A stretch of DNA of 64,000 bases from Magallana gigas (Eukaryota), in the NCBI RefSeq assembly GCF_963853765.1, contig NC_088855.1, positions 2,418,001 to 2,482,000 on the forward strand, read 5' to 3'. Positions within the stretch are counted from its first letter, which is position 1; every line of letters starts with the position of its first letter. The notes under the pieces are model-generated. The model saw nothing but the letters and a program-made list of their open reading frames with translations. It made no database searches and had not been told where the DNA came from. The position numbers were made by a program, and so were the translations under genes. Of this stretch, positions 15,630-59,402 are shown one piece after another.

Positions 15630-16340
15630 TTCAATTTTTAAAACATTCTACTGTAAAGGTAACGAAAAGGGACTTAAACATATTTTATCAGGTTAAACAT
15701 ACTGTTCCCTTTCATAATATTTTTAATTTATGTAAATGACTTGAAATATACGTAAAACTTTCATATGAATACTTTATGGGGCGACTCACACCTAATTTAC
15801 TTATGATTCCCTTTTATGAAAGCAATCATACGATCTTCAAATGATACAAATATGTTGAGGTTGCCTGTGTTAAAAACTGCTGGTAACAACTGTCAATTTC
15901 TGTACAAAATTTATTATGACTCTAACAGTTTCACATGCAGTCACTTTATATATTTATGAATAAACAATCAATAAACATTATTGAATTTCACGTAAACGTT
16001 TTCGTAGAAAACAAGCATACATACGTACTTGACATTGGAATAACAATAGGTATGCATAAGACCTCCTGCTAAGCTAGAATAAAATTAATGTGATCTTGTA
16101 TTTTATTCTAAAGTAATAACATCTTTACCTGTATAACTCAATATAAAACATCCAGTTCATGCAAAAATAATCGCAGCCAGACCTCACCCCGTCTCTTTCC
16201 CCGACACTGGTTCAAAACACGCCGTTCTAGACTTTCACATCACACGACACTTGACTTTATTGTGATATTTCGCGGTGTGATCACAATTGTTTTTGATTTT
16301 CTACACTTTTAAACAACATAAAGCGTGGATGACTAAATTT

Positions 16341-19300
16341 TACGGAAGCCCATATAGGACCTATCAAAAAATATTTTTGAATTTGATATAACGAATTCTT
16401 GAATTTGTTAAAACGAATTTAAATCGTTATAACGAATTGTTGAATCCGTTATAACGAATTAAATTTGTTATAACAAATTTTAGGAATACGTTATAACGAA
16501 TTTAATCTGTTATAACAAATTCGCTGAATTCGTTATTTCAAATTTTAAAATCTGTTTTAACAAATTAAATTAGAAATATCGAATTCAAGAATTCGTTATT
16601 TCAAAGTTTTAATTCGTAATTTCGTTTTTTTTAAATCGGTTAAAACATATTTTCATCCAATTTGTGGTAACAAATTTCATGTTTTGGGGAACAAATTAGA
16701 CGGGGCGGACTTCCTTTGTCCCATATCGGCGAACGACGAAATGCGCCGATCAATTGATCGGCGTTAAACGGCGAAATGGTAAATGAAGTAAACTGGCCTA
16801 AAAACAAAAGTGGAGAAACATATTGTCACAGCTGTTGCTGTAACCATGGTAACAGATGTAACAATTCCAAAAGACACCTTGTTTTATCAGCTTTGCTAGA
16901 ATTCCTACATAGATAGAAACAAAATATTTAAGAATTGTTATATATTGAGCAATGCAAATTCACCAAAAATACAATATATACAGATTTGTTTTGACGGGTT
17001 TCTGTGCAAAATTCCAAAAATTTGTTTAATTAATGCTATCATCAGTGAGCATGCTGATTTATTAACATATATCTGCATTTTTCATCTCATTACATCACCA
17101 AACCGTGAGATTACGCCATACTTAAAAAAATACCGGTCTGCAATTGATTTAAGAATAAGGAATCATTCTTTGAGTATTACTAGTTTCAGGTGATTTTGGC
17201 CGGGACATGTTCAAATCAAATAAAGCTCAAAGGGATTTATGATAGATTTGACCACGCTCTGACCGAAATTATCAACTCATAGTATTCAAAGAATGATTTC
17301 TTTTTACTCTAATACTTATATTATTTCCAATTTCTACACTTTAAAATAACATTTTAAAACCACTGTTTTTTAATGAATAACACATGCTATGTATTATTAC
17401 GCAGCGCAGCCAATACTGTTTTTCGGTTTTGCTGTAGGACACGCCCATTTTGTGTCGCTCGTTTTTTATGAAATTATTGGGCTGGGTTATCACAGTAAAG
17501 GACACTTAAAAATATAAATATAATATTTTATATGATGTAGCCAGGCATTATAACCAGGATGTGCGCATGCGTGAACCAACTTTCCATCAGAACGATGTAT
17601 CTAGAATAGGTTATTCTTTTATATAGTACAACCAGGCACTATTACCAGAATGTGTGCATGCGTGTATCGACGTTGGGAGGAAATTCGAAAGCTGTTTTGG
17701 GGAACTTCGAACTGATATTTGCGCAATTTAAAAACGTATAGGAAAATTCATCCGATTTTTACATTATAAATGTTAATTAAAAGAGATAGGAAAGTTGTGT
17801 ACATTAGATTCACACCTAAATGATGAATAAATATTTGTATTTGAGAGAACAATAAAGATCAATGTTACAATAAACAATAGGCACTATAAGCATCGGAGTG
17901 GGGGGGGGGGGGGGGATGTGGAGTGGAACAGGGGCAGGGAGACGAGACTACCCCCTTCAGCACACATTTTCTAGCAGCAAACATTTTTCTTAAATTTACA
18001 TATAAAAGATGAATTCCCCTCCTCCCCCCCCCCCCCCCCCGCCCCCCAATGTTTTTGGGACCAGGTAAAAACTGAAATAAAAGGGAGGAAATAAACTGTA
18101 GAATTGAAGTTAAAGGTACGCCTTACCCCATACCCCCACGGATTAGGATTTTTAAATGTTTTAATAGCATAGTGTATGTATCACTAGGGTCAGTGTTCGT
18201 ATCACCAGGATGGCCATAACCTGGGTCAGTATTACGATTATCAGGATGTCTACATGTATATCTCTTACCAGGGTCAGTGTACGTATCACCAGGGTCTGTG
18301 TGCCCATCATCTGGGTCTCCAAACAAATAACCTGGGTCAGTGTACGTATCATTAGGGTCAGTGTATGTATCACTAGGGTCAGTGTTCGTATCACCAGGGT
18401 CTGTATACCCATAACCTGGGTCAGTATTACGATTTACAGGATGTTTATATTTATTACCGAGGTCAGTGTACGTATCATCAGGGTCTGTGTGCTCATCACC
18501 AAGTCATTAGACCCATCGTCAGGGTCTTAATGCATATCACCAAGGTCAGTATACATATCACCAGGGTCTGGGTGCTCAATACCAGGGTCTCAAAACTTAT
18601 ATTGTTATAGGTATTGAGACCCAGGTGATGGGTATACTGGATCTGGTTACGCGTATACATGTACACACACTTGTAATTGGGTACAATAACCTTGGATATA
18701 TGTAAACTTACGCTGGTGATGGGTATAGTATACTGATTCTGGATATGGGTATATAGACGCTTGTGATGTGCACTCTGGCCCTATTAATAATAATAGTGTA
18801 CAGACCCTGGTGATAGGCATATAGACCCTAATTAAACGTACACTGACCCTGGTGATAGGCATTGAGACCCTGGTGATGGTTACGTGGCTTTAAGTAAACA
18901 GACCCTGGTGATGAGCACAAAGACACATTGACCCTCGGGATAAGTATTGAGACCCTAGTGTCCTTGTGATGGTTATACTGAATCTGGTTATGCGTATACA
19001 GACCCTGGTGATATGTACACCGACTCTGGTAGTACTTACTGACCCTGGTAATATTTACTCTGACCCTGGTGATGGGTATACAGAACCTGGTGATGGACAC
19101 ACAGACCTTGGTGAGGAGTTATGGATAGAGCTACATTGGGTCGGTGTTCTGACTACCCCTATCACTCCTAATAACCCCTAAAAAAAGAAAAACAAAATAA
19201 ATTATTCCTCTCCTCCTAACCTTAATTTTTTTTTTTATATTGAATCTAAGCGTTTATAGAACCTGGTATATTGTATGAGATACAGTAATATTGGTTTATA

Positions 19301-21087
19301 TATAAACCCAATTTTTTTTACTGGTATATGTAAGGAAACTGTGATATTTTGTTCAGGCATGTGGCATCGTAAACAAGTTAAAAAAGGGGGGGGGGGGTGG
19401 GAGAATCGCCAAACAATTCTTGACATGCAAAAAAAAAGTTCTTTCAAAAATCGTACACCGTGGGAGTAGCTATAGAAATGCTAAGTTAACATCAAACTAA
19501 AATTTCACTGTTTATTTCCTCCCAGTCACTTTCAATTGTTTACATGCTCTGAAAATGCTAGGAAAGGGGGGGCAACTGCATGGGGACAGGCCTCTCCCTG
19601 TCACCCCCACCCACCCACCCGTTTGAAGCTACGTGTCTATTGTTTTCCTGAAGCATTGCCTTTATTGTCCTCGCAAATATTTATTTAACTTTTTATAGTG
19701 TTAACCAAAGGTACATAACATTCCTATCACTTTTAATGACTATAAGATATAAAAGTTGTTTTTTTTGTTTTTGTTTGTGGGTTTTTTTTGCACCTATCAT
19801 CAGTTCGAAGTTTCTCCAAGAAGCTATCGAATTTCCTCCAAAACGTTTACTAATCCCGATGGAAAGTTGGTTCACGCATGCGCACATCCTGGTTATAATG
19901 CCTGGCTATGTCATATAAAATATCATATTTATATTTTTCAAGTGTCCTTTACTGCGATAACATTGCAATTCAATTTGGAAACCTATGGCCTAATTATTTC
20001 ACCAAAAAAAATGAGCGACACAAAATGGGCGTGTCCTACAGCATAACCGAAAAACGGTATTTGCTGCAATAATACATAACATGTGCTATGCATGAAAAAA
20101 AAACCAGTGGCTTTGAAATGTTGTTTTGAAATGTAGAATTTAAAAATAATATTAATATATAAGCAAAAAGGCATCATTCTTTGAATATTATGAGGTGATG
20201 ATATTGGTCGGAGCGTGCATATCAAATCTATTATAAAGCCCTTCAAGCTTTATTGGATTCGAACACGCACCGACCAAAATAAATAGGAACAATGAACATA
20301 AATATGCCCATGCATGCGTTTAAAGATATCCTATCCATCGATAAAAGGCGATTCGAAAAGCAAATTTTAAAATCGTATAAAAAGAAATCATGACGTCACT
20401 GAAGCCTCGTTATCGCTTTGAAGAGGCGTAACTCCATTATTTTTGCATCAATTTCGATGTAGTTTTTGCATTAAATTCTGGTAAATACAATGTAAATTCT
20501 ATGACATAAATTCGACATTGGCTGAGCTGCAGGTACCCTTATAAAAATCAACATGCTCAATGATTAATAGCATTGACTAAACAATTTTTGGTTATTTTGC
20601 GCAGAAACCCGTTGAAACAAAACTGTATATCCTGCATATTATTTTTGGTAAAAATGCGTTGCTACATATATAGCAGTTCTAAATATTTCGTTTCATCTAT
20701 GTAGAAAATCTAGCAAAGCCGATAAAGTAAGGCGTCTTTTGGAATTGTTTCATCTGTTTTCACAAATTGGATGAAAATATGTTATAACCGATTTAAAAAA
20801 AACCGAAATTACGAATTAAAACTTTGAAATAACGAATTCAAGAATTCGTTATTTCAAATTTAATCTGTTAAAACAGATTTTAAAGTTTGAAATAACGAAT
20901 TCAGCGAATTTGTTATAACAGATTAAATTCGTTATAATGAATTCCTAAAATTTGTTATAACAAATTTAATTCGTTATAACGGATTCAACAATTCGTTATC
21001 ACGATTTAAATTCGTTTTAACGAATTCAAGAATTCGTTATATCAAATTCAAAAATATTTTTTGATAGGTCCTAAATGGGCTTCCGTA
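16341..21087. mobile_element. 4.75-kb non-autonomous foldback DNA transposon, IS3EU-like termini (TAC..GTA, 6-bp TSD)
   Basis: Ends tacggaagccca / tgggcttccgta, flanked by aaattt at 16335-16340 and 21088-21093. About 340-bp outer TIRs built of ataacgaatt subrepeats; inverted homology continues inward to the centre; no transposase ORF. IS3EU assignment rests on recalled superfamily signatures (TAY..RTA ends, 6-bp TSD). Confidence 0.8.
18165..19115. repeat. About 21-bp minisatellite in two opposite-orientation blocks
   Basis: tcaccagggtcagtgtacgta-type units at 18165-18590; gaccctggtga-type (reverse complement) units at 18615-19115. Confidence 0.9.
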
Positions 21088-21117
21088 AAATTTAGACTGT
21101 ATAAGATTTTGATCAAA

Positions 21118-22920
21118 TCAGTAAACCGCCGACTGCTTTATTTGGTATGGTTTAAAATGATTTTCAACTGACTTGTCTTGTTTTTTATTCTGAGTTTGGA
21201 ACGACTGGCGTTTTAGCCTTACTTTATTTTTGTCGTTGAAATCACTGAATGTGGAGGCTATGATTGCAATAGGCATAGCAATGATCAAAACACCGGACAG
21301 GGCGCACACCGTACCCACGATCCTCCCAAGCAACGTCTTGGGATACTCGTCGCCATAACCAACGGTCGTCATGGTGATGACCGACCACCAGATTCCCGTG
21401 AACACACTGGGGAAAGTGGTCGGTTCTTTGTACTCCGCGTAGTAAACGAACCCCGCGAAAAAAGTGGAGAAAAACATGAAGGCCATCATCAACAATCCAA
21501 TCTCCCACTTACTGTTCCCCATCGCCAAGAAGAGCATGTTCAGACCATTGTGTTGCCGGATAAGACGGAGCAAGCGGAAAGGACGGAACACAGAGCACAG
21601 CTTGAATGTTATGTACACGGTTCCTGCAATCTTTCCGGCACTCCATATCTCGACGAATTCCATCACGGTGGTGGTCCACATGGAAAAGACAAGGAAGGCG
21701 TCCAGGACATTGAGAGGGGACCGGAAGAATTGCTTTTTGACAGGACATGTTGCAAAATGAAGAATCAGATCTGTCGTGAAGAAAGCAAGACATGTCACCT
21801 GGAGGTGATACAACGAGGGCTTAACAACTGTGGTCACGAAGACGATCTCTTTGGGGTTATCCATATTGACATCGTCGAAAAGGTCGGTGAAGTTCATCAA
21901 TCCCAGAATTTCGTCCTTGGTTTGGACCTGTTCCCTGAAGAGGGGGTGGGTCTCCATGCAGAACAGCGCTACAGACAGGACGGTCACCAGCATAAAGAAG
22001 ATGCTGTAGATCTGGAATGGAGCATGCGCGTTATTGTTCCATAAATTTATGTAATACAAATAATGTTGACCTTCTTTTAAGAATTCTAACCATTTTATAT
22101 AAAATAGGTACCATGTGGTACATTAGAAAATTAATAGACAAGGCTGAAACGACGCTGTGCTGACTATTCTATTCTTAATGTAGCCCATTTATTTTATCTT
22201 ACTACAAAATATACTTCTCGTGACATCACGTGCATTTACAATAATGAAAATGTAAAACATATCACTTTTATACAAAAGAAGAAGTCATTTTAATTCAAAA
22301 TTTGCAATTCGTATATGAATATTTGTAATCTTAGTCTATTTAAAAGTAAATATATACAATATTAAATGAATAAATTAAAATTAAATAAATCAATGCTACT
22401 AGTATATGTACCACGTCCTTCCAAATTGTGTGCTATTTCTCTAAACGTTAACCAAGTATATACTTACAAAGGCTGGCTTGGAGGAGTTCGGACGATCAAA
22501 GAAAAGCCAGGTCTGCCTGAGGAGCTGTTTTGCTTTGTTTTCACTCACTTCCTTAGAGTTGTAGTCAATTTCCACGTCGTCTAGACGCCGTTTCAGCTCC
22601 ATGTGCTTTTTGACGCTCTCTTCGTACTCAGTGATGATCTTCAGACAGCATTCAGCAATGTGGCTCTGGTGGATGTCCCAGTACTCCAACTCTTTGAGGG
22701 TCGCGGCAGCACACACGTTTTGTGGGAGGTGTAGTTCGCCGAGTCTGTAAAAGTCCAGGATGTTGGAGAAGATGGTGTGGTTCCTGTCTATAATGACGGG
22801 ATCCTCGCCGTACGTTTCCTGTGCCATCTTCCCTAGCCGGGTTGACGGGTAAGTCAGTAAGTTTTGACGCTTCGTCTTAAAGGTCATTCCACCAACGTCA
22901 AAGGTCATGAACTCCATCAT
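21118..22920 (-). CDS. Voltage-gated potassium channel subunit, divergent Shaw/Kv3-like (T1 domain plus six transmembrane segments)
   Basis: Exon 22920-22468 (T1: FDVGGMTFKT, YPSTRLG, DRNHTIFSNILDFYRLGELHLPQNVC, ELEYW) joins phase 0 to exon 22011-21118 (S1-S6, pore WWSVITMTTVGYGDEYPKT). An upstream in-frame extension cannot be excluded. Confidence 0.9.
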
Positions 22921-59256: not shown

Positions 59257-59402
59257 NNNNNNNNNNNNNNNNNNNNNNNNNNNNNNNNNNNNNNNNNNNN
59301 NNNNNNNNNNNNNNNNNNNNNNNNNNNNNNNNNNNNNNNNNNNNNNNNNNNNNNNNNNNNNNNNNNNNNNNNNNNNNNNNNNNNNNNNNNNNNNNNNNNN
59401 NN
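59257..59402. other. Assembly gap (146 N)
   Basis: Run of n. Confidence 1.

What the first reader, a model, noticed from the sequence alone, without database searches (positions are those of the whole stretch)
16341..21087. 4.75-kb transposon that is a palindrome end to end, with arm identity decaying toward the centre
Seen in sequence: TAC..GTA termini with a 6-bp aaattt duplication. By eye, the outer 340 bp are nearly identical in inversion; 16853-17065 pairs with 20545-20760; 17195-17740 with 19795-20285; 17760-18155 with 19440-19750 at clearly lower identity; and a central minisatellite flips orientation near 18595. No coding capacity is visible. Inference: an IS3EU-like non-autonomous element formed by fold-back or inverted dimerisation of one end, whose tips are kept homogenised (by transposase selection or conversion) while the interior drifts. 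Such a gradient along a 2.3-2.5-kb arm is unusual and could record repeated rounds of terminal repair.
Basis: partly seen in the sequence, partly recalled or inferred. Interest (0 to 1): 0.78.

Follow-up and report, generated by a model that had tools for sequence, protein, structure and literature searches.

The report
Palindromic non-autonomous IS3EU transposon in oyster
This 4.75-kb stretch is one still-polymorphic copy of a roughly 55-copy, non-coding "foldback" jumping gene of the IS3EU type in an oyster; its mirror-image arms are an old family trait and its near-identical tips are the part the transposase needs, so it is a clear example of a known kind of element, not a new one.

Summary
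Window 16341-21087 is a 4747-bp element with TAC..GTA ends and a 6-bp AAATTT duplication. It is self-complementary from end to end and has no coding capacity.

It belongs to a family with 113 termini in this genome, about 55 copies. Sixteen of 21 paired copies have a perfect 6-bp duplication.

A public-run contig joins 16334 directly to 21088 with a single AAATTT. The insertion is therefore polymorphic.

Two other loci share the outer 336 bp, then encode an integrase-core DDE protein. Its catalytic block matches the published IS3EU-1_CGi and IS3EU-1_DR cores. Together with the TA..TA ends and the 6-bp duplication, this supports the IS3EU/GingerRoot assignment.

The identity "gradient" is real but stepwise, and it is a family trait:
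- All copies share one interior orientation, and inner left and right arms are separate lineages. The roughly 20% inner divergence therefore predates amplification.
- The outer 0.3-0.8 kb shows no left/right differentiation and evolves in concert (tree, and permutation p of about 5e-5).
- This copy shows no sign of in-place repair.

Galileo foldback elements in Drosophila are a precedent. This scan also noted other palindromic IS3EU elements elsewhere in this genome.

Verdict: a new member of a known kind, of modest interest.

The parts
16335..16340 (.). Left target-site duplication, AAATTT
   Evidence: The empty-site contig keeps a single copy.
16341..21087 (.). Whole non-autonomous IS3EU-type element, 4747 bp, self-complementary end to end
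16341..16676 (+). Left terminal region of 336 bp. This is the only part shared with the transposase-bearing partner loci (96.7% between the family consensus and L039).
   Evidence: Identity between copies is 98% at the tip, falling to about 94% by 300 bp.
16380..16544 (.). Left array of 8 copies of an 18-bp palindromic motif (consensus AATTCGTTATAACGAATT), spaced alternately about 19 and 22 bp. Presumed transposase-binding sites.
   Evidence: 17 matches in the window, 16 in the two tips, against 0.12 expected by chance. The tip folds strongly as single-stranded DNA, z -9.9.
16660..16840 (+). Segment present in the left arm but missing from this copy's right arm. The family consensus has it in both arms.
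16841..17640 (+). Left mid-arm, pairing with 19845-20760 at 82-89%, with a 92-98% island at about 17441-17640
17143..17375 (.). High-copy repeat of about 230 bp, MITE-like, embedded in the left arm. Its mirror copy lies at about 20095-20330.
   Evidence: Depth peaks at 17158-17351 and 20068-20261. About 84% matches outside the family, 1576 first-look candidates.
17641..18146 (+). Inner left arm, pairing with about 19115-19844 at roughly 77-84% with many gaps
18147..18610 (+). Central 21-bp minisatellite, first orientation
18592..19113 (-). Central 21-bp minisatellite, opposite orientation. The axis of symmetry is near 18590-18610.
20752..21087 (-). Right terminal region, 95-96% complementary to the left one
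20843..21048 (.). Right array of 8 copies of the 18-bp palindromic motif
21088..21093 (.). Right target-site duplication, AAATTT

Best explanation
This is one insertion of a non-coding, foldback-shaped member of the IS3EU/GingerRoot superfamily of cut-and-paste DNA transposons. The insertion is still polymorphic in the population.

How it moves (inferred). An IS3EU transposase supplied from elsewhere in the genome mobilises it. That transposase recognises the outer roughly 336 bp of each end. This is the only part shared with the transposase-bearing partner, and it carries about eight 18-bp palindromic sites per end. Integration uses 6-bp staggered cuts.

How the palindrome arose (inferred). 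An old inverted duplication took one terminus together with about 2.3 kb of adjoining non-coding DNA. That DNA already held a MITE-like repeat and a 21-bp minisatellite. The duplication happened in the family's ancestor.

What happened afterwards. The inner arms have evolved independently and had diverged by about 20% before the family spread. The outer 0.3-0.8 kb has stayed alike for two reasons:
- Only copies with good ends keep transposing (selection).
- In the source lineages, one arm has repeatedly been used as repair template for the other. These repairs start at the tip and run inwards for variable lengths.

Together these give the step-like fall of identity with distance from the tip.

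Shown: family membership, duplications, polymorphism, shared interior orientation, concerted evolution of the outer arms, a partner with an IS3EU-type DDE core.

Inferred: transposase binding to the 18-mers, the fold-back origin, and repair as the homogenising mechanism.
For: Family size. There are 113 termini matching a 25-mer with at most 2 mismatches, and none for the control pattern.

Target-site duplications. Sixteen of 21 end pairs checked have a perfect 6-bp duplication, with no sequence consensus.

Polymorphism. In run X1, contig record 2 maps 16093-16334 and then 21088-21600 with no mismatches. That is an exact empty site. Runs X15 and X18 have contigs crossing the left junction, so they carry the filled allele.

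Ancestral arm divergence.
- All 18 full copies orient unambiguously to the window's interior.
- In the inner segments, left-left and right-right identity between copies is 0.83-0.94. Left-right identity is 0.78-0.88.

Conservation gradient between copies: 98% at the tip, then 95%, 94%, and about 90% in the interior.

Consensus arms: 98-100% alike to about 600 bp, about 90% at 600-1100, 97% at 1100-1260, and about 80% further in.

Variable TIR length. The near-perfect stretch differs among copies, from 300 to 800 bp.

Concerted evolution.
- In a tree of the 505-725 segment, left and right arms of the same copy or subfamily cluster together at least three times. The cases are L050 (100/98), C3_51.7M (99/95) and the L031/33/34/35 group.
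- A copy's own left-right identity exceeds permuted pairings. p = 8.5e-4 for 1-200, 5e-5 for 1-330 and 5e-5 for 331-700.

Partner element.
- L039 and L038 share the first 336 bp with the family consensus (L039 96.7%).
- They are colinear with each other starting exactly at the TAC terminus, and their outside flanks are unrelated.
- Both hold a 271-aa reading frame, intact in L039 and with one TAA stop in L038. The L039 frame matches Pfam rva_4 integrase core at 2e-23, and the IS3 and IS481 models at about 1e-5.
- The WHMDSYDKLKPYG..INGCIDGFSRNI..WLE, DRGTEN and RIESWW blocks match IS3EU-1_CGi and IS3EU-1_DR in the supplement of PMC10045372.

Superfamily definition. IS3EU elements have TA..TA termini and usually 6-bp duplications (PMC10045372; PMC6839031).
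Against: - The partner's second end could not be fetched. It is therefore not proven to be a complete element with a 6-bp duplication.
- Only two near-identical partner copies exist, and one carries a stop codon. Current activity is not shown.
- Only 18 of about 55 copies were analysed.
- The concerted-evolution signal in the outermost 200 bp is small, about 0.35 percentage points.
- Recurrent CpG changes could mimic some symmetric variants.
- Transposase binding to the 18-mers has not been tested.
- The motif comparison with Repbase IS3EU proteins was made by eye from supplement text, not by an alignment tool.
- An exact empty site could also be a rare precise excision.
Confidence: 0.78

Rival explanations
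1. The tips of this particular copy are kept identical in place, by repeated arm-to-arm conversion or terminal repair at this locus.
For: Some other copies have almost identical tips, for example L033 at 99.7% and L032 at 98.5%. The outer arms do evolve in concert across the family.
Against: In this copy the two 330-bp tips differ at 15 positions (95.4%). Three changes are private to the left tip, six to the right, and none is private and symmetric. Its left-right identity falls within the range seen between its tips and those of other copies (mean 92%). The step pattern is present in the family consensus and in every copy.
Confidence: 0.07
2. Selection alone explains the pattern. The tips look homogenised only because both ends must keep the same transposase-binding sequence, and no conversion takes place.
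For: The outer 336 bp are exactly the part shared with the transposase-bearing partner. They are the most conserved part between copies.
Against: The region from 337 to about 700 bp is not shared with the partner. Yet it is 96-100% alike between arms in several subfamilies and only 82-89% alike in this copy. Left and right arms of the same copy cluster together in the tree. A copy's own left-right identity exceeds permuted pairs.
Confidence: 0.12
3. The structure is an assembly artefact (a chimeric fold-back read), or two separate head-to-head insertions rather than one mobile unit.
For: Palindromes are a known artefact of long-read libraries. No single public contig spans the element.
Against: The arms are diverged rather than identical. 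At least 17 other loci have the same oriented architecture, each bounded by its own 6-bp duplication. A single AAATTT marks the empty allele.
Confidence: 0.01
4. The element is a derivative of another superfamily that also makes 6-bp duplications or uses an integrase-like enzyme, such as Polinton/Maverick or Ginger.
For: Polintons make 6-bp duplications, have long TIRs and encode an rve-type integrase. The two family termini that flank the partner on C7 lie 20.7 kb apart.
Against: The termini are TA..TA, not AG..CT. No protein-primed polymerase match lies near either partner locus; the nearest is about 170 kb away. The transposase core matches IS3EU sequence blocks. Ginger elements make 4-5 bp duplications.
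Confidence: 0.02

Closest known systems
[quoted passage not shown] 2019, PMC6839031; Kojima 2023, PMC10045372)
   Same: TA..TA termini, 6-bp target-site duplications and terminal inverted repeats. The partner has an integrase-like DDE transposase without an adjoining reverse transcriptase. The superfamily is already reported in the Pacific oyster.
   Different: Described GingerRoot TIRs are 100-150 bp. Here the inverted repeat covers the whole 4.7 kb, the tips carry arrays of an 18-bp palindrome, and the copy has no gene. I could not check whether this exact family is already in Repbase.
Galileo (P superfamily) and other foldback elements of Drosophila (FB, Tetris); Marzo et al. 2013, PMC3573991
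   Same: Very long, internally repetitive TIRs. The non-autonomous copies have the longest TIRs. TIR length varies between copies. Marzo et al. propose that TIRs are extended when one arm is used as repair template for the other.
   Different: The transposase superfamily differs (P versus IS3EU), and so does the duplication length (7 bp versus 6 bp). Here there is almost no unique middle domain, and the inner arms are old and about 20% diverged.
Other palindromic or long-TIR IS3EU-like elements noted by this scan in the same genome (s1-394908, s1-366393, s1-399391)
   Same: Same genome, same type of ends and duplication, long inverted arms. One of them was also found to be polymorphic.
   Different: They are other loci and probably other families. 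Those reports mention a pogo fragment or a HECT ligase as cargo, and none was seen here. I did not test their claims.

Membership tests
IS3EU/GingerRoot | 5'-TA ... TA-3' termini | tested here: met
   TACGG...CCGTA in the window copy and in 20 other end pairs. The criterion comes from PMC10045372.
IS3EU/GingerRoot | Target-site duplication of 6 bp | tested here: met
   Perfect in 16 of 21 end pairs, and one mismatch in 2-3 more. The empty allele has a single AAATTT.
IS3EU/GingerRoot | An autonomous relative that shares the termini and encodes an IS3EU-type DDE transposase | tested here: met
   L039 and L038 share the 336-bp terminus. Both hold a 271-aa reading frame (intact in L039, one TAA stop in L038), and the L039 frame matches rva_4/rve. 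Its DDE blocks match IS3EU-1_CGi and IS3EU-1_DR in the supplement alignment (comparison by eye).
IS3EU/GingerRoot | The partner is a complete element with a second inverted terminus and its own 6-bp duplication | tested here: inconclusive
   A reverse terminus lies 20.7 kb away on C7.
IS3EU/GingerRoot | The transposase falls inside the IS3EU/GingerRoot clade in a phylogeny | not tested
Foldback-type elements (structural class: FB, Galileo, Tetris) | TIRs that make up most of the element and are internally repetitive | tested here: met
   Arms of about 2.3 kb each. Arrays of 41-42-bp and 18-bp units in the tips, and a 21-bp minisatellite.
Foldback-type elements (structural class: FB, Galileo, Tetris) | TIR length varies between copies, with arm-to-arm exchange | tested here: met
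   The near-perfect stretch is 300-800 bp depending on the copy. Left and right arms of the same copy cluster together. Permutation p is about 5e-5.
Polinton/Maverick | 5'-AG...CT-3' termini and a protein-primed DNA polymerase B | tested here: not met
   The termini are TA..TA. No PF03175 match lies near the partner loci.
hAT | 8-bp target-site duplication | tested here: not met
   The duplications are 6 bp.

The most novel reading that the evidence does not exclude
Regenerating one end from the other, starting at the tip, could be an intrinsic by-product of IS3EU transposition. One route would be fold-back of a single-stranded or nicked intermediate, followed by templated synthesis or mismatch repair. 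IS3EU elements would then be systematically prone to turn into foldback palindromes. That would explain why several unrelated palindromic IS3EU families occur in this one genome.
Probability: 0.12. Interest if true: 0.6.

Novelty: new member of a known kind. Interest (0 to 1): 0.3.

Why it matters
The locus gives a clean example, with numbers, of how a non-autonomous transposon family evolves. There is a constrained 336-bp recognition end shared with its transposase donor. Next to it is a zone of concerted arm-to-arm evolution of variable length. Inside that is a freely drifting relic of an old inverted duplication.

It extends foldback-type architecture and Galileo-like TIR dynamics to the little-studied IS3EU superfamily in a mollusc.

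It also supplies candidate transposase-binding sites (the 18-bp palindromes) that can be tested directly.

Locally, the insertion is polymorphic and sits 24 nt downstream of the stop codon of a voltage-gated K+ channel gene. It may therefore alter that gene's 3' end in carriers.

None of this changes how these elements are understood.

Tried and rejected
- The longest end pairs were checked as possible autonomous copies. C1:16.9M (12 kb) holds a nested reverse transcriptase and a Harbinger-type DDE_Tnp_4 gene, and its flanks do not match, so it is not a partner.
- A genome search with the IS481 model put a 110-bit hit 4.7 kb from a family terminus on C10. The true partner protein scores only about 22 bits on that model. 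The C10 hit is therefore another integrase family, and I dropped it. It could not be fetched in any case.
- Open frames of 170-215 aa inside several copies are read-through of the 21-bp minisatellite (heptad repeats such as DPGDTYT). The one frame scanned, in L045, has no Pfam match.
- The supplement of the GingerRoot paper is not held, so its oyster DDE sequence could not be compared.
- Ten further full copies and the partner's far ends could not be fetched.
- All public runs were short-read contigs, so spanning by long reads could not be checked.
- The costly large protein searches were not used, because the family scans and the published alignment settled the transposase type.
Full report
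**The observation**

The element runs from 16341 (TAC) to 21087 (GTA). AAATTT lies at 16335-16340 and again at 21088-21093.

I aligned the 4747 bp globally against its own reverse complement. Identity of aligned bases, in 100-bp windows from the tip:
- 97, 98 and 94% for the outer 300 bp.
- About 180 bp (about 16660-16840) is present only in the left arm.
- 82-89% up to 17440.
- An island of 92-98% at about 17441-17640.
- 77-84% with many gaps from there to the centre.

The central 21-bp minisatellite changes orientation near 18590-18610.

No reading frame exceeds 106 aa. Ten frames reached no Pfam cut-off (one weak DUF3447 hit at E 0.06), and Rfam finds nothing inside the element. The window's only run of N is at 59257-59402, far from the element.

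The caveat is that the decay is stepwise and not monotonic. In the centre, two arrays of the same unit align at about 75-80% in any register.

**It is a mobile family**

The window is C3:2418001-2482000 of a 564-Mb genome.

The outer 320 bp recur at 93-96% identity at many loci. A 25-mer of the terminus, allowing 2 mismatches, is found 54 times forward and 59 times reverse. The control pattern is found 0 times. That makes about 55 copies, mostly 4.5-6.2 kb.

Of 21 end pairs inspected, 16 have a perfect 6-bp duplication. The duplicated sequences are unrelated and AT-rich. One of the pairs is a 167-bp miniature derivative.

**The insertion is polymorphic**

I laid public contigs on 15800-21600.
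- In run X1, an 864-bp contig maps 16093-16334 and continues at 21088-21600 with no mismatch. This is the exact empty site with one AAATTT.
- Runs X15 and X18 hold contigs that cross the left junction into the element.
- Three runs also show a second, more diverged haplotype that skips 16286-21100.

All runs are short-read contigs, so spanning by a single molecule could not be checked.

**Superfamily**

Kojima 2023 (PMC10045372) states that complete IS3EU families always have TA..TA termini and usually 6-bp duplications. GingerRoot has the same features and has relatives in the Pacific oyster (PMC6839031).

Two loci, L039 on C7 and L038 on C4, share the first 336 bp with the family consensus (L039 96.7%) and then have an unrelated interior. 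They are colinear with each other starting exactly at the TAC terminus. Identity is 96% over the first 712 bp and 97% over 3 kb. Their outside flanks are unrelated.

About 3.6 kb inside, both hold a 271-aa frame.
- In L039 it starts with ATG and is intact. In L038 it has one TAA stop.
- The L039 frame matches Pfam rva_4 (integrase core) at 2e-23, and rve weakly.
- It matches the IS3 and IS481 transposase models at about 1e-5.
- Its blocks around the three catalytic residues are WHMDSYDKLKPYG..INGCIDGFSRNI..WLE, DRGTEN and RIESWW. They match almost residue for residue the IS3EU-1_CGi and IS3EU-1_DR cores printed in that paper's supplementary alignment. I made this comparison by eye.

No protein-primed polymerase lies near either locus, and the termini are not AG..CT. 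A Polinton origin is therefore unlikely.

The partner's second end could not be fetched.

**The arm pattern is a family trait**

- All 18 full copies orient unambiguously against the window's interior. The left/right asymmetry is therefore older than the amplification.
- In the inner segments, left-left and right-right identity between copies is 0.83-0.94. Left-right identity is 0.78-0.88. These are two old paralogous lineages.
- Identity between copies falls from 98% in the outer 100 bp to 95%, then 94%, then about 90% in the interior.
- In the majority consensus (computed but not printed), the arms are 98-100% alike to about 600 bp. They are about 90% alike at 600-1100, 97% at 1100-1260 and about 80% further in.
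- Every copy shows a high outer step. Its length differs: about 300 bp here, 400 bp in L032, 600-700 bp in L031/33/34/35 and 800 bp in L050.

**Concerted evolution of the outer arms**

- In the outer 330 bp there are almost no positions that separate left from right ends across the family.
- A maximum-likelihood tree of the 505-725 segment has a left clade and a right clade. It also has at least three places where the two arms of the same copy or subfamily are each other's closest relatives: L050 (100/98), C3_51.7M (99/95) and the L031/33/34/35 group.
- A copy's own left-right identity exceeds permuted left-right pairings. p = 8.5e-4 for 1-200, 5e-5 for 1-330 and 5e-5 for 331-700.
- Differences in copy age cannot bias this statistic. 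It compares the same sums of branch lengths.

The window copy itself shows no such event. Its tips differ at 15 of 330 positions. Three changes are private to the left, six to the right, and none is private and symmetric.

**Anatomy of the tips**

Each tip holds eight copies (3 or fewer mismatches) of an 18-bp perfect palindrome, spaced alternately about 19 and 22 bp. The window has 17 such matches, 16 of them in the two tips, against 0.12 expected by chance. Each tip alone folds strongly as single-stranded DNA, z -9.9. I infer that these are transposase-binding sites.

Each arm also holds, at mirror positions, a MITE-like repeat of about 230 bp. That repeat has many copies outside the family. 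The duplicated arm was therefore ordinary repeat-bearing DNA, not transposon-specific sequence.

**Most likely history and mechanism**

1. An ancestral element was formed from one IS3EU terminus plus about 2.3 kb of adjoining DNA, duplicated in inverted orientation.
2. The inner arms then drifted apart by about 20%.
3. The family later spread through several source lineages.
4. In those lineages, selection for mobilisation kept the outer 336 bp intact.
5. Repairs that began at an end and copied the other arm for a variable length overwrote the next few hundred bp again and again.

Sites close to the tip were overwritten most recently, which gives the steps. Marzo et al. proposed the same mechanism for TIR extension in Galileo (PMC3573991).

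Steps 1 and 5 are inference.

**Novelty**

The superfamily, the foldback architecture and the TIR dynamics are each known. Earlier notes of this scan report other palindromic IS3EU elements in this genome (I did not test them). I found no paper describing a foldback IS3EU family in oysters, and I could not consult Repbase.

I rate it a new member of a known kind, with modest interest.

Noticed in passing
window 21118-22059 (minus strand), with 21251-21363: The element's right end lies 24 nt downstream of the TGA stop (21118-21120) of a voltage-gated K+ channel exon (Pfam Ion_trans 1.5e-34). The polymorphic insertion is therefore probably in or at that gene's 3' UTR. The exon also contains an Rfam K_chan_RES match, the potassium-channel RNA-editing signal (67.7 bits, gathering score 51).
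   Followed up: partly
window about 17143-17375 and about 20095-20330: A MITE-like repeat of about 230 bp, itself partly palindromic, sits at mirror positions in both arms. It has many copies elsewhere (about 84% matches outside the family, 1576 first-look candidates, depth peaks in reads).
   Followed up: partly
L059:301-467 (C4:17221324-17221490): A 167-bp miniature derivative made of 120 bp of one tip and 47 bp of the other, flanked by a perfect GAGAAG duplication.
   Followed up: partly
C7:36992153-36992782 and C7:36996645-36996866 (coordinates only): A 3.9-kb family copy (C7:36992762-36996644) splits the reading frame of a related IS3EU transposase gene. Four other related transposase genes (53-55% identity) lie within about 8 kb of family copies (C2:30225340, C7:16464346, C5:7448981, C7:49086173). 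This suggests clustering, or a preference for inserting into related elements.
   Followed up: no
window 16286-21100 joint: A second empty-site haplotype, more diverged around the insertion point and with a further 192-bp gap at 16048-16241, is present in three of the four runs.
   Followed up: no
L039:2791-3416: A repeat of about 625 bp with at least 38 further copies at 94-97% identity across the genome is nested in the partner element between its terminus and its transposase gene.
   Followed up: no
L051:4145-5890 and L051:6923-7792: A 12-kb interval between two family termini on C1 holds a reverse-transcriptase frame (RVT_1, 7e-35) and a Harbinger-type transposase (DDE_Tnp_4, 1.8e-37). These are nested or neighbouring insertions.
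   Followed up: partly
genome contig C1: Matches to the protein-primed DNA polymerase B family (Polinton/Maverick-type) are overwhelmingly concentrated on contig C1 of this assembly.
   Followed up: no
L045:3270-3914, L046:3287-3922: In several copies the 21-bp minisatellite stays open for 170-215 codons and would encode heptad repeats such as DPGDTYT. The L045 frame has no Pfam match. It is probably meaningless read-through.
   Followed up: partly
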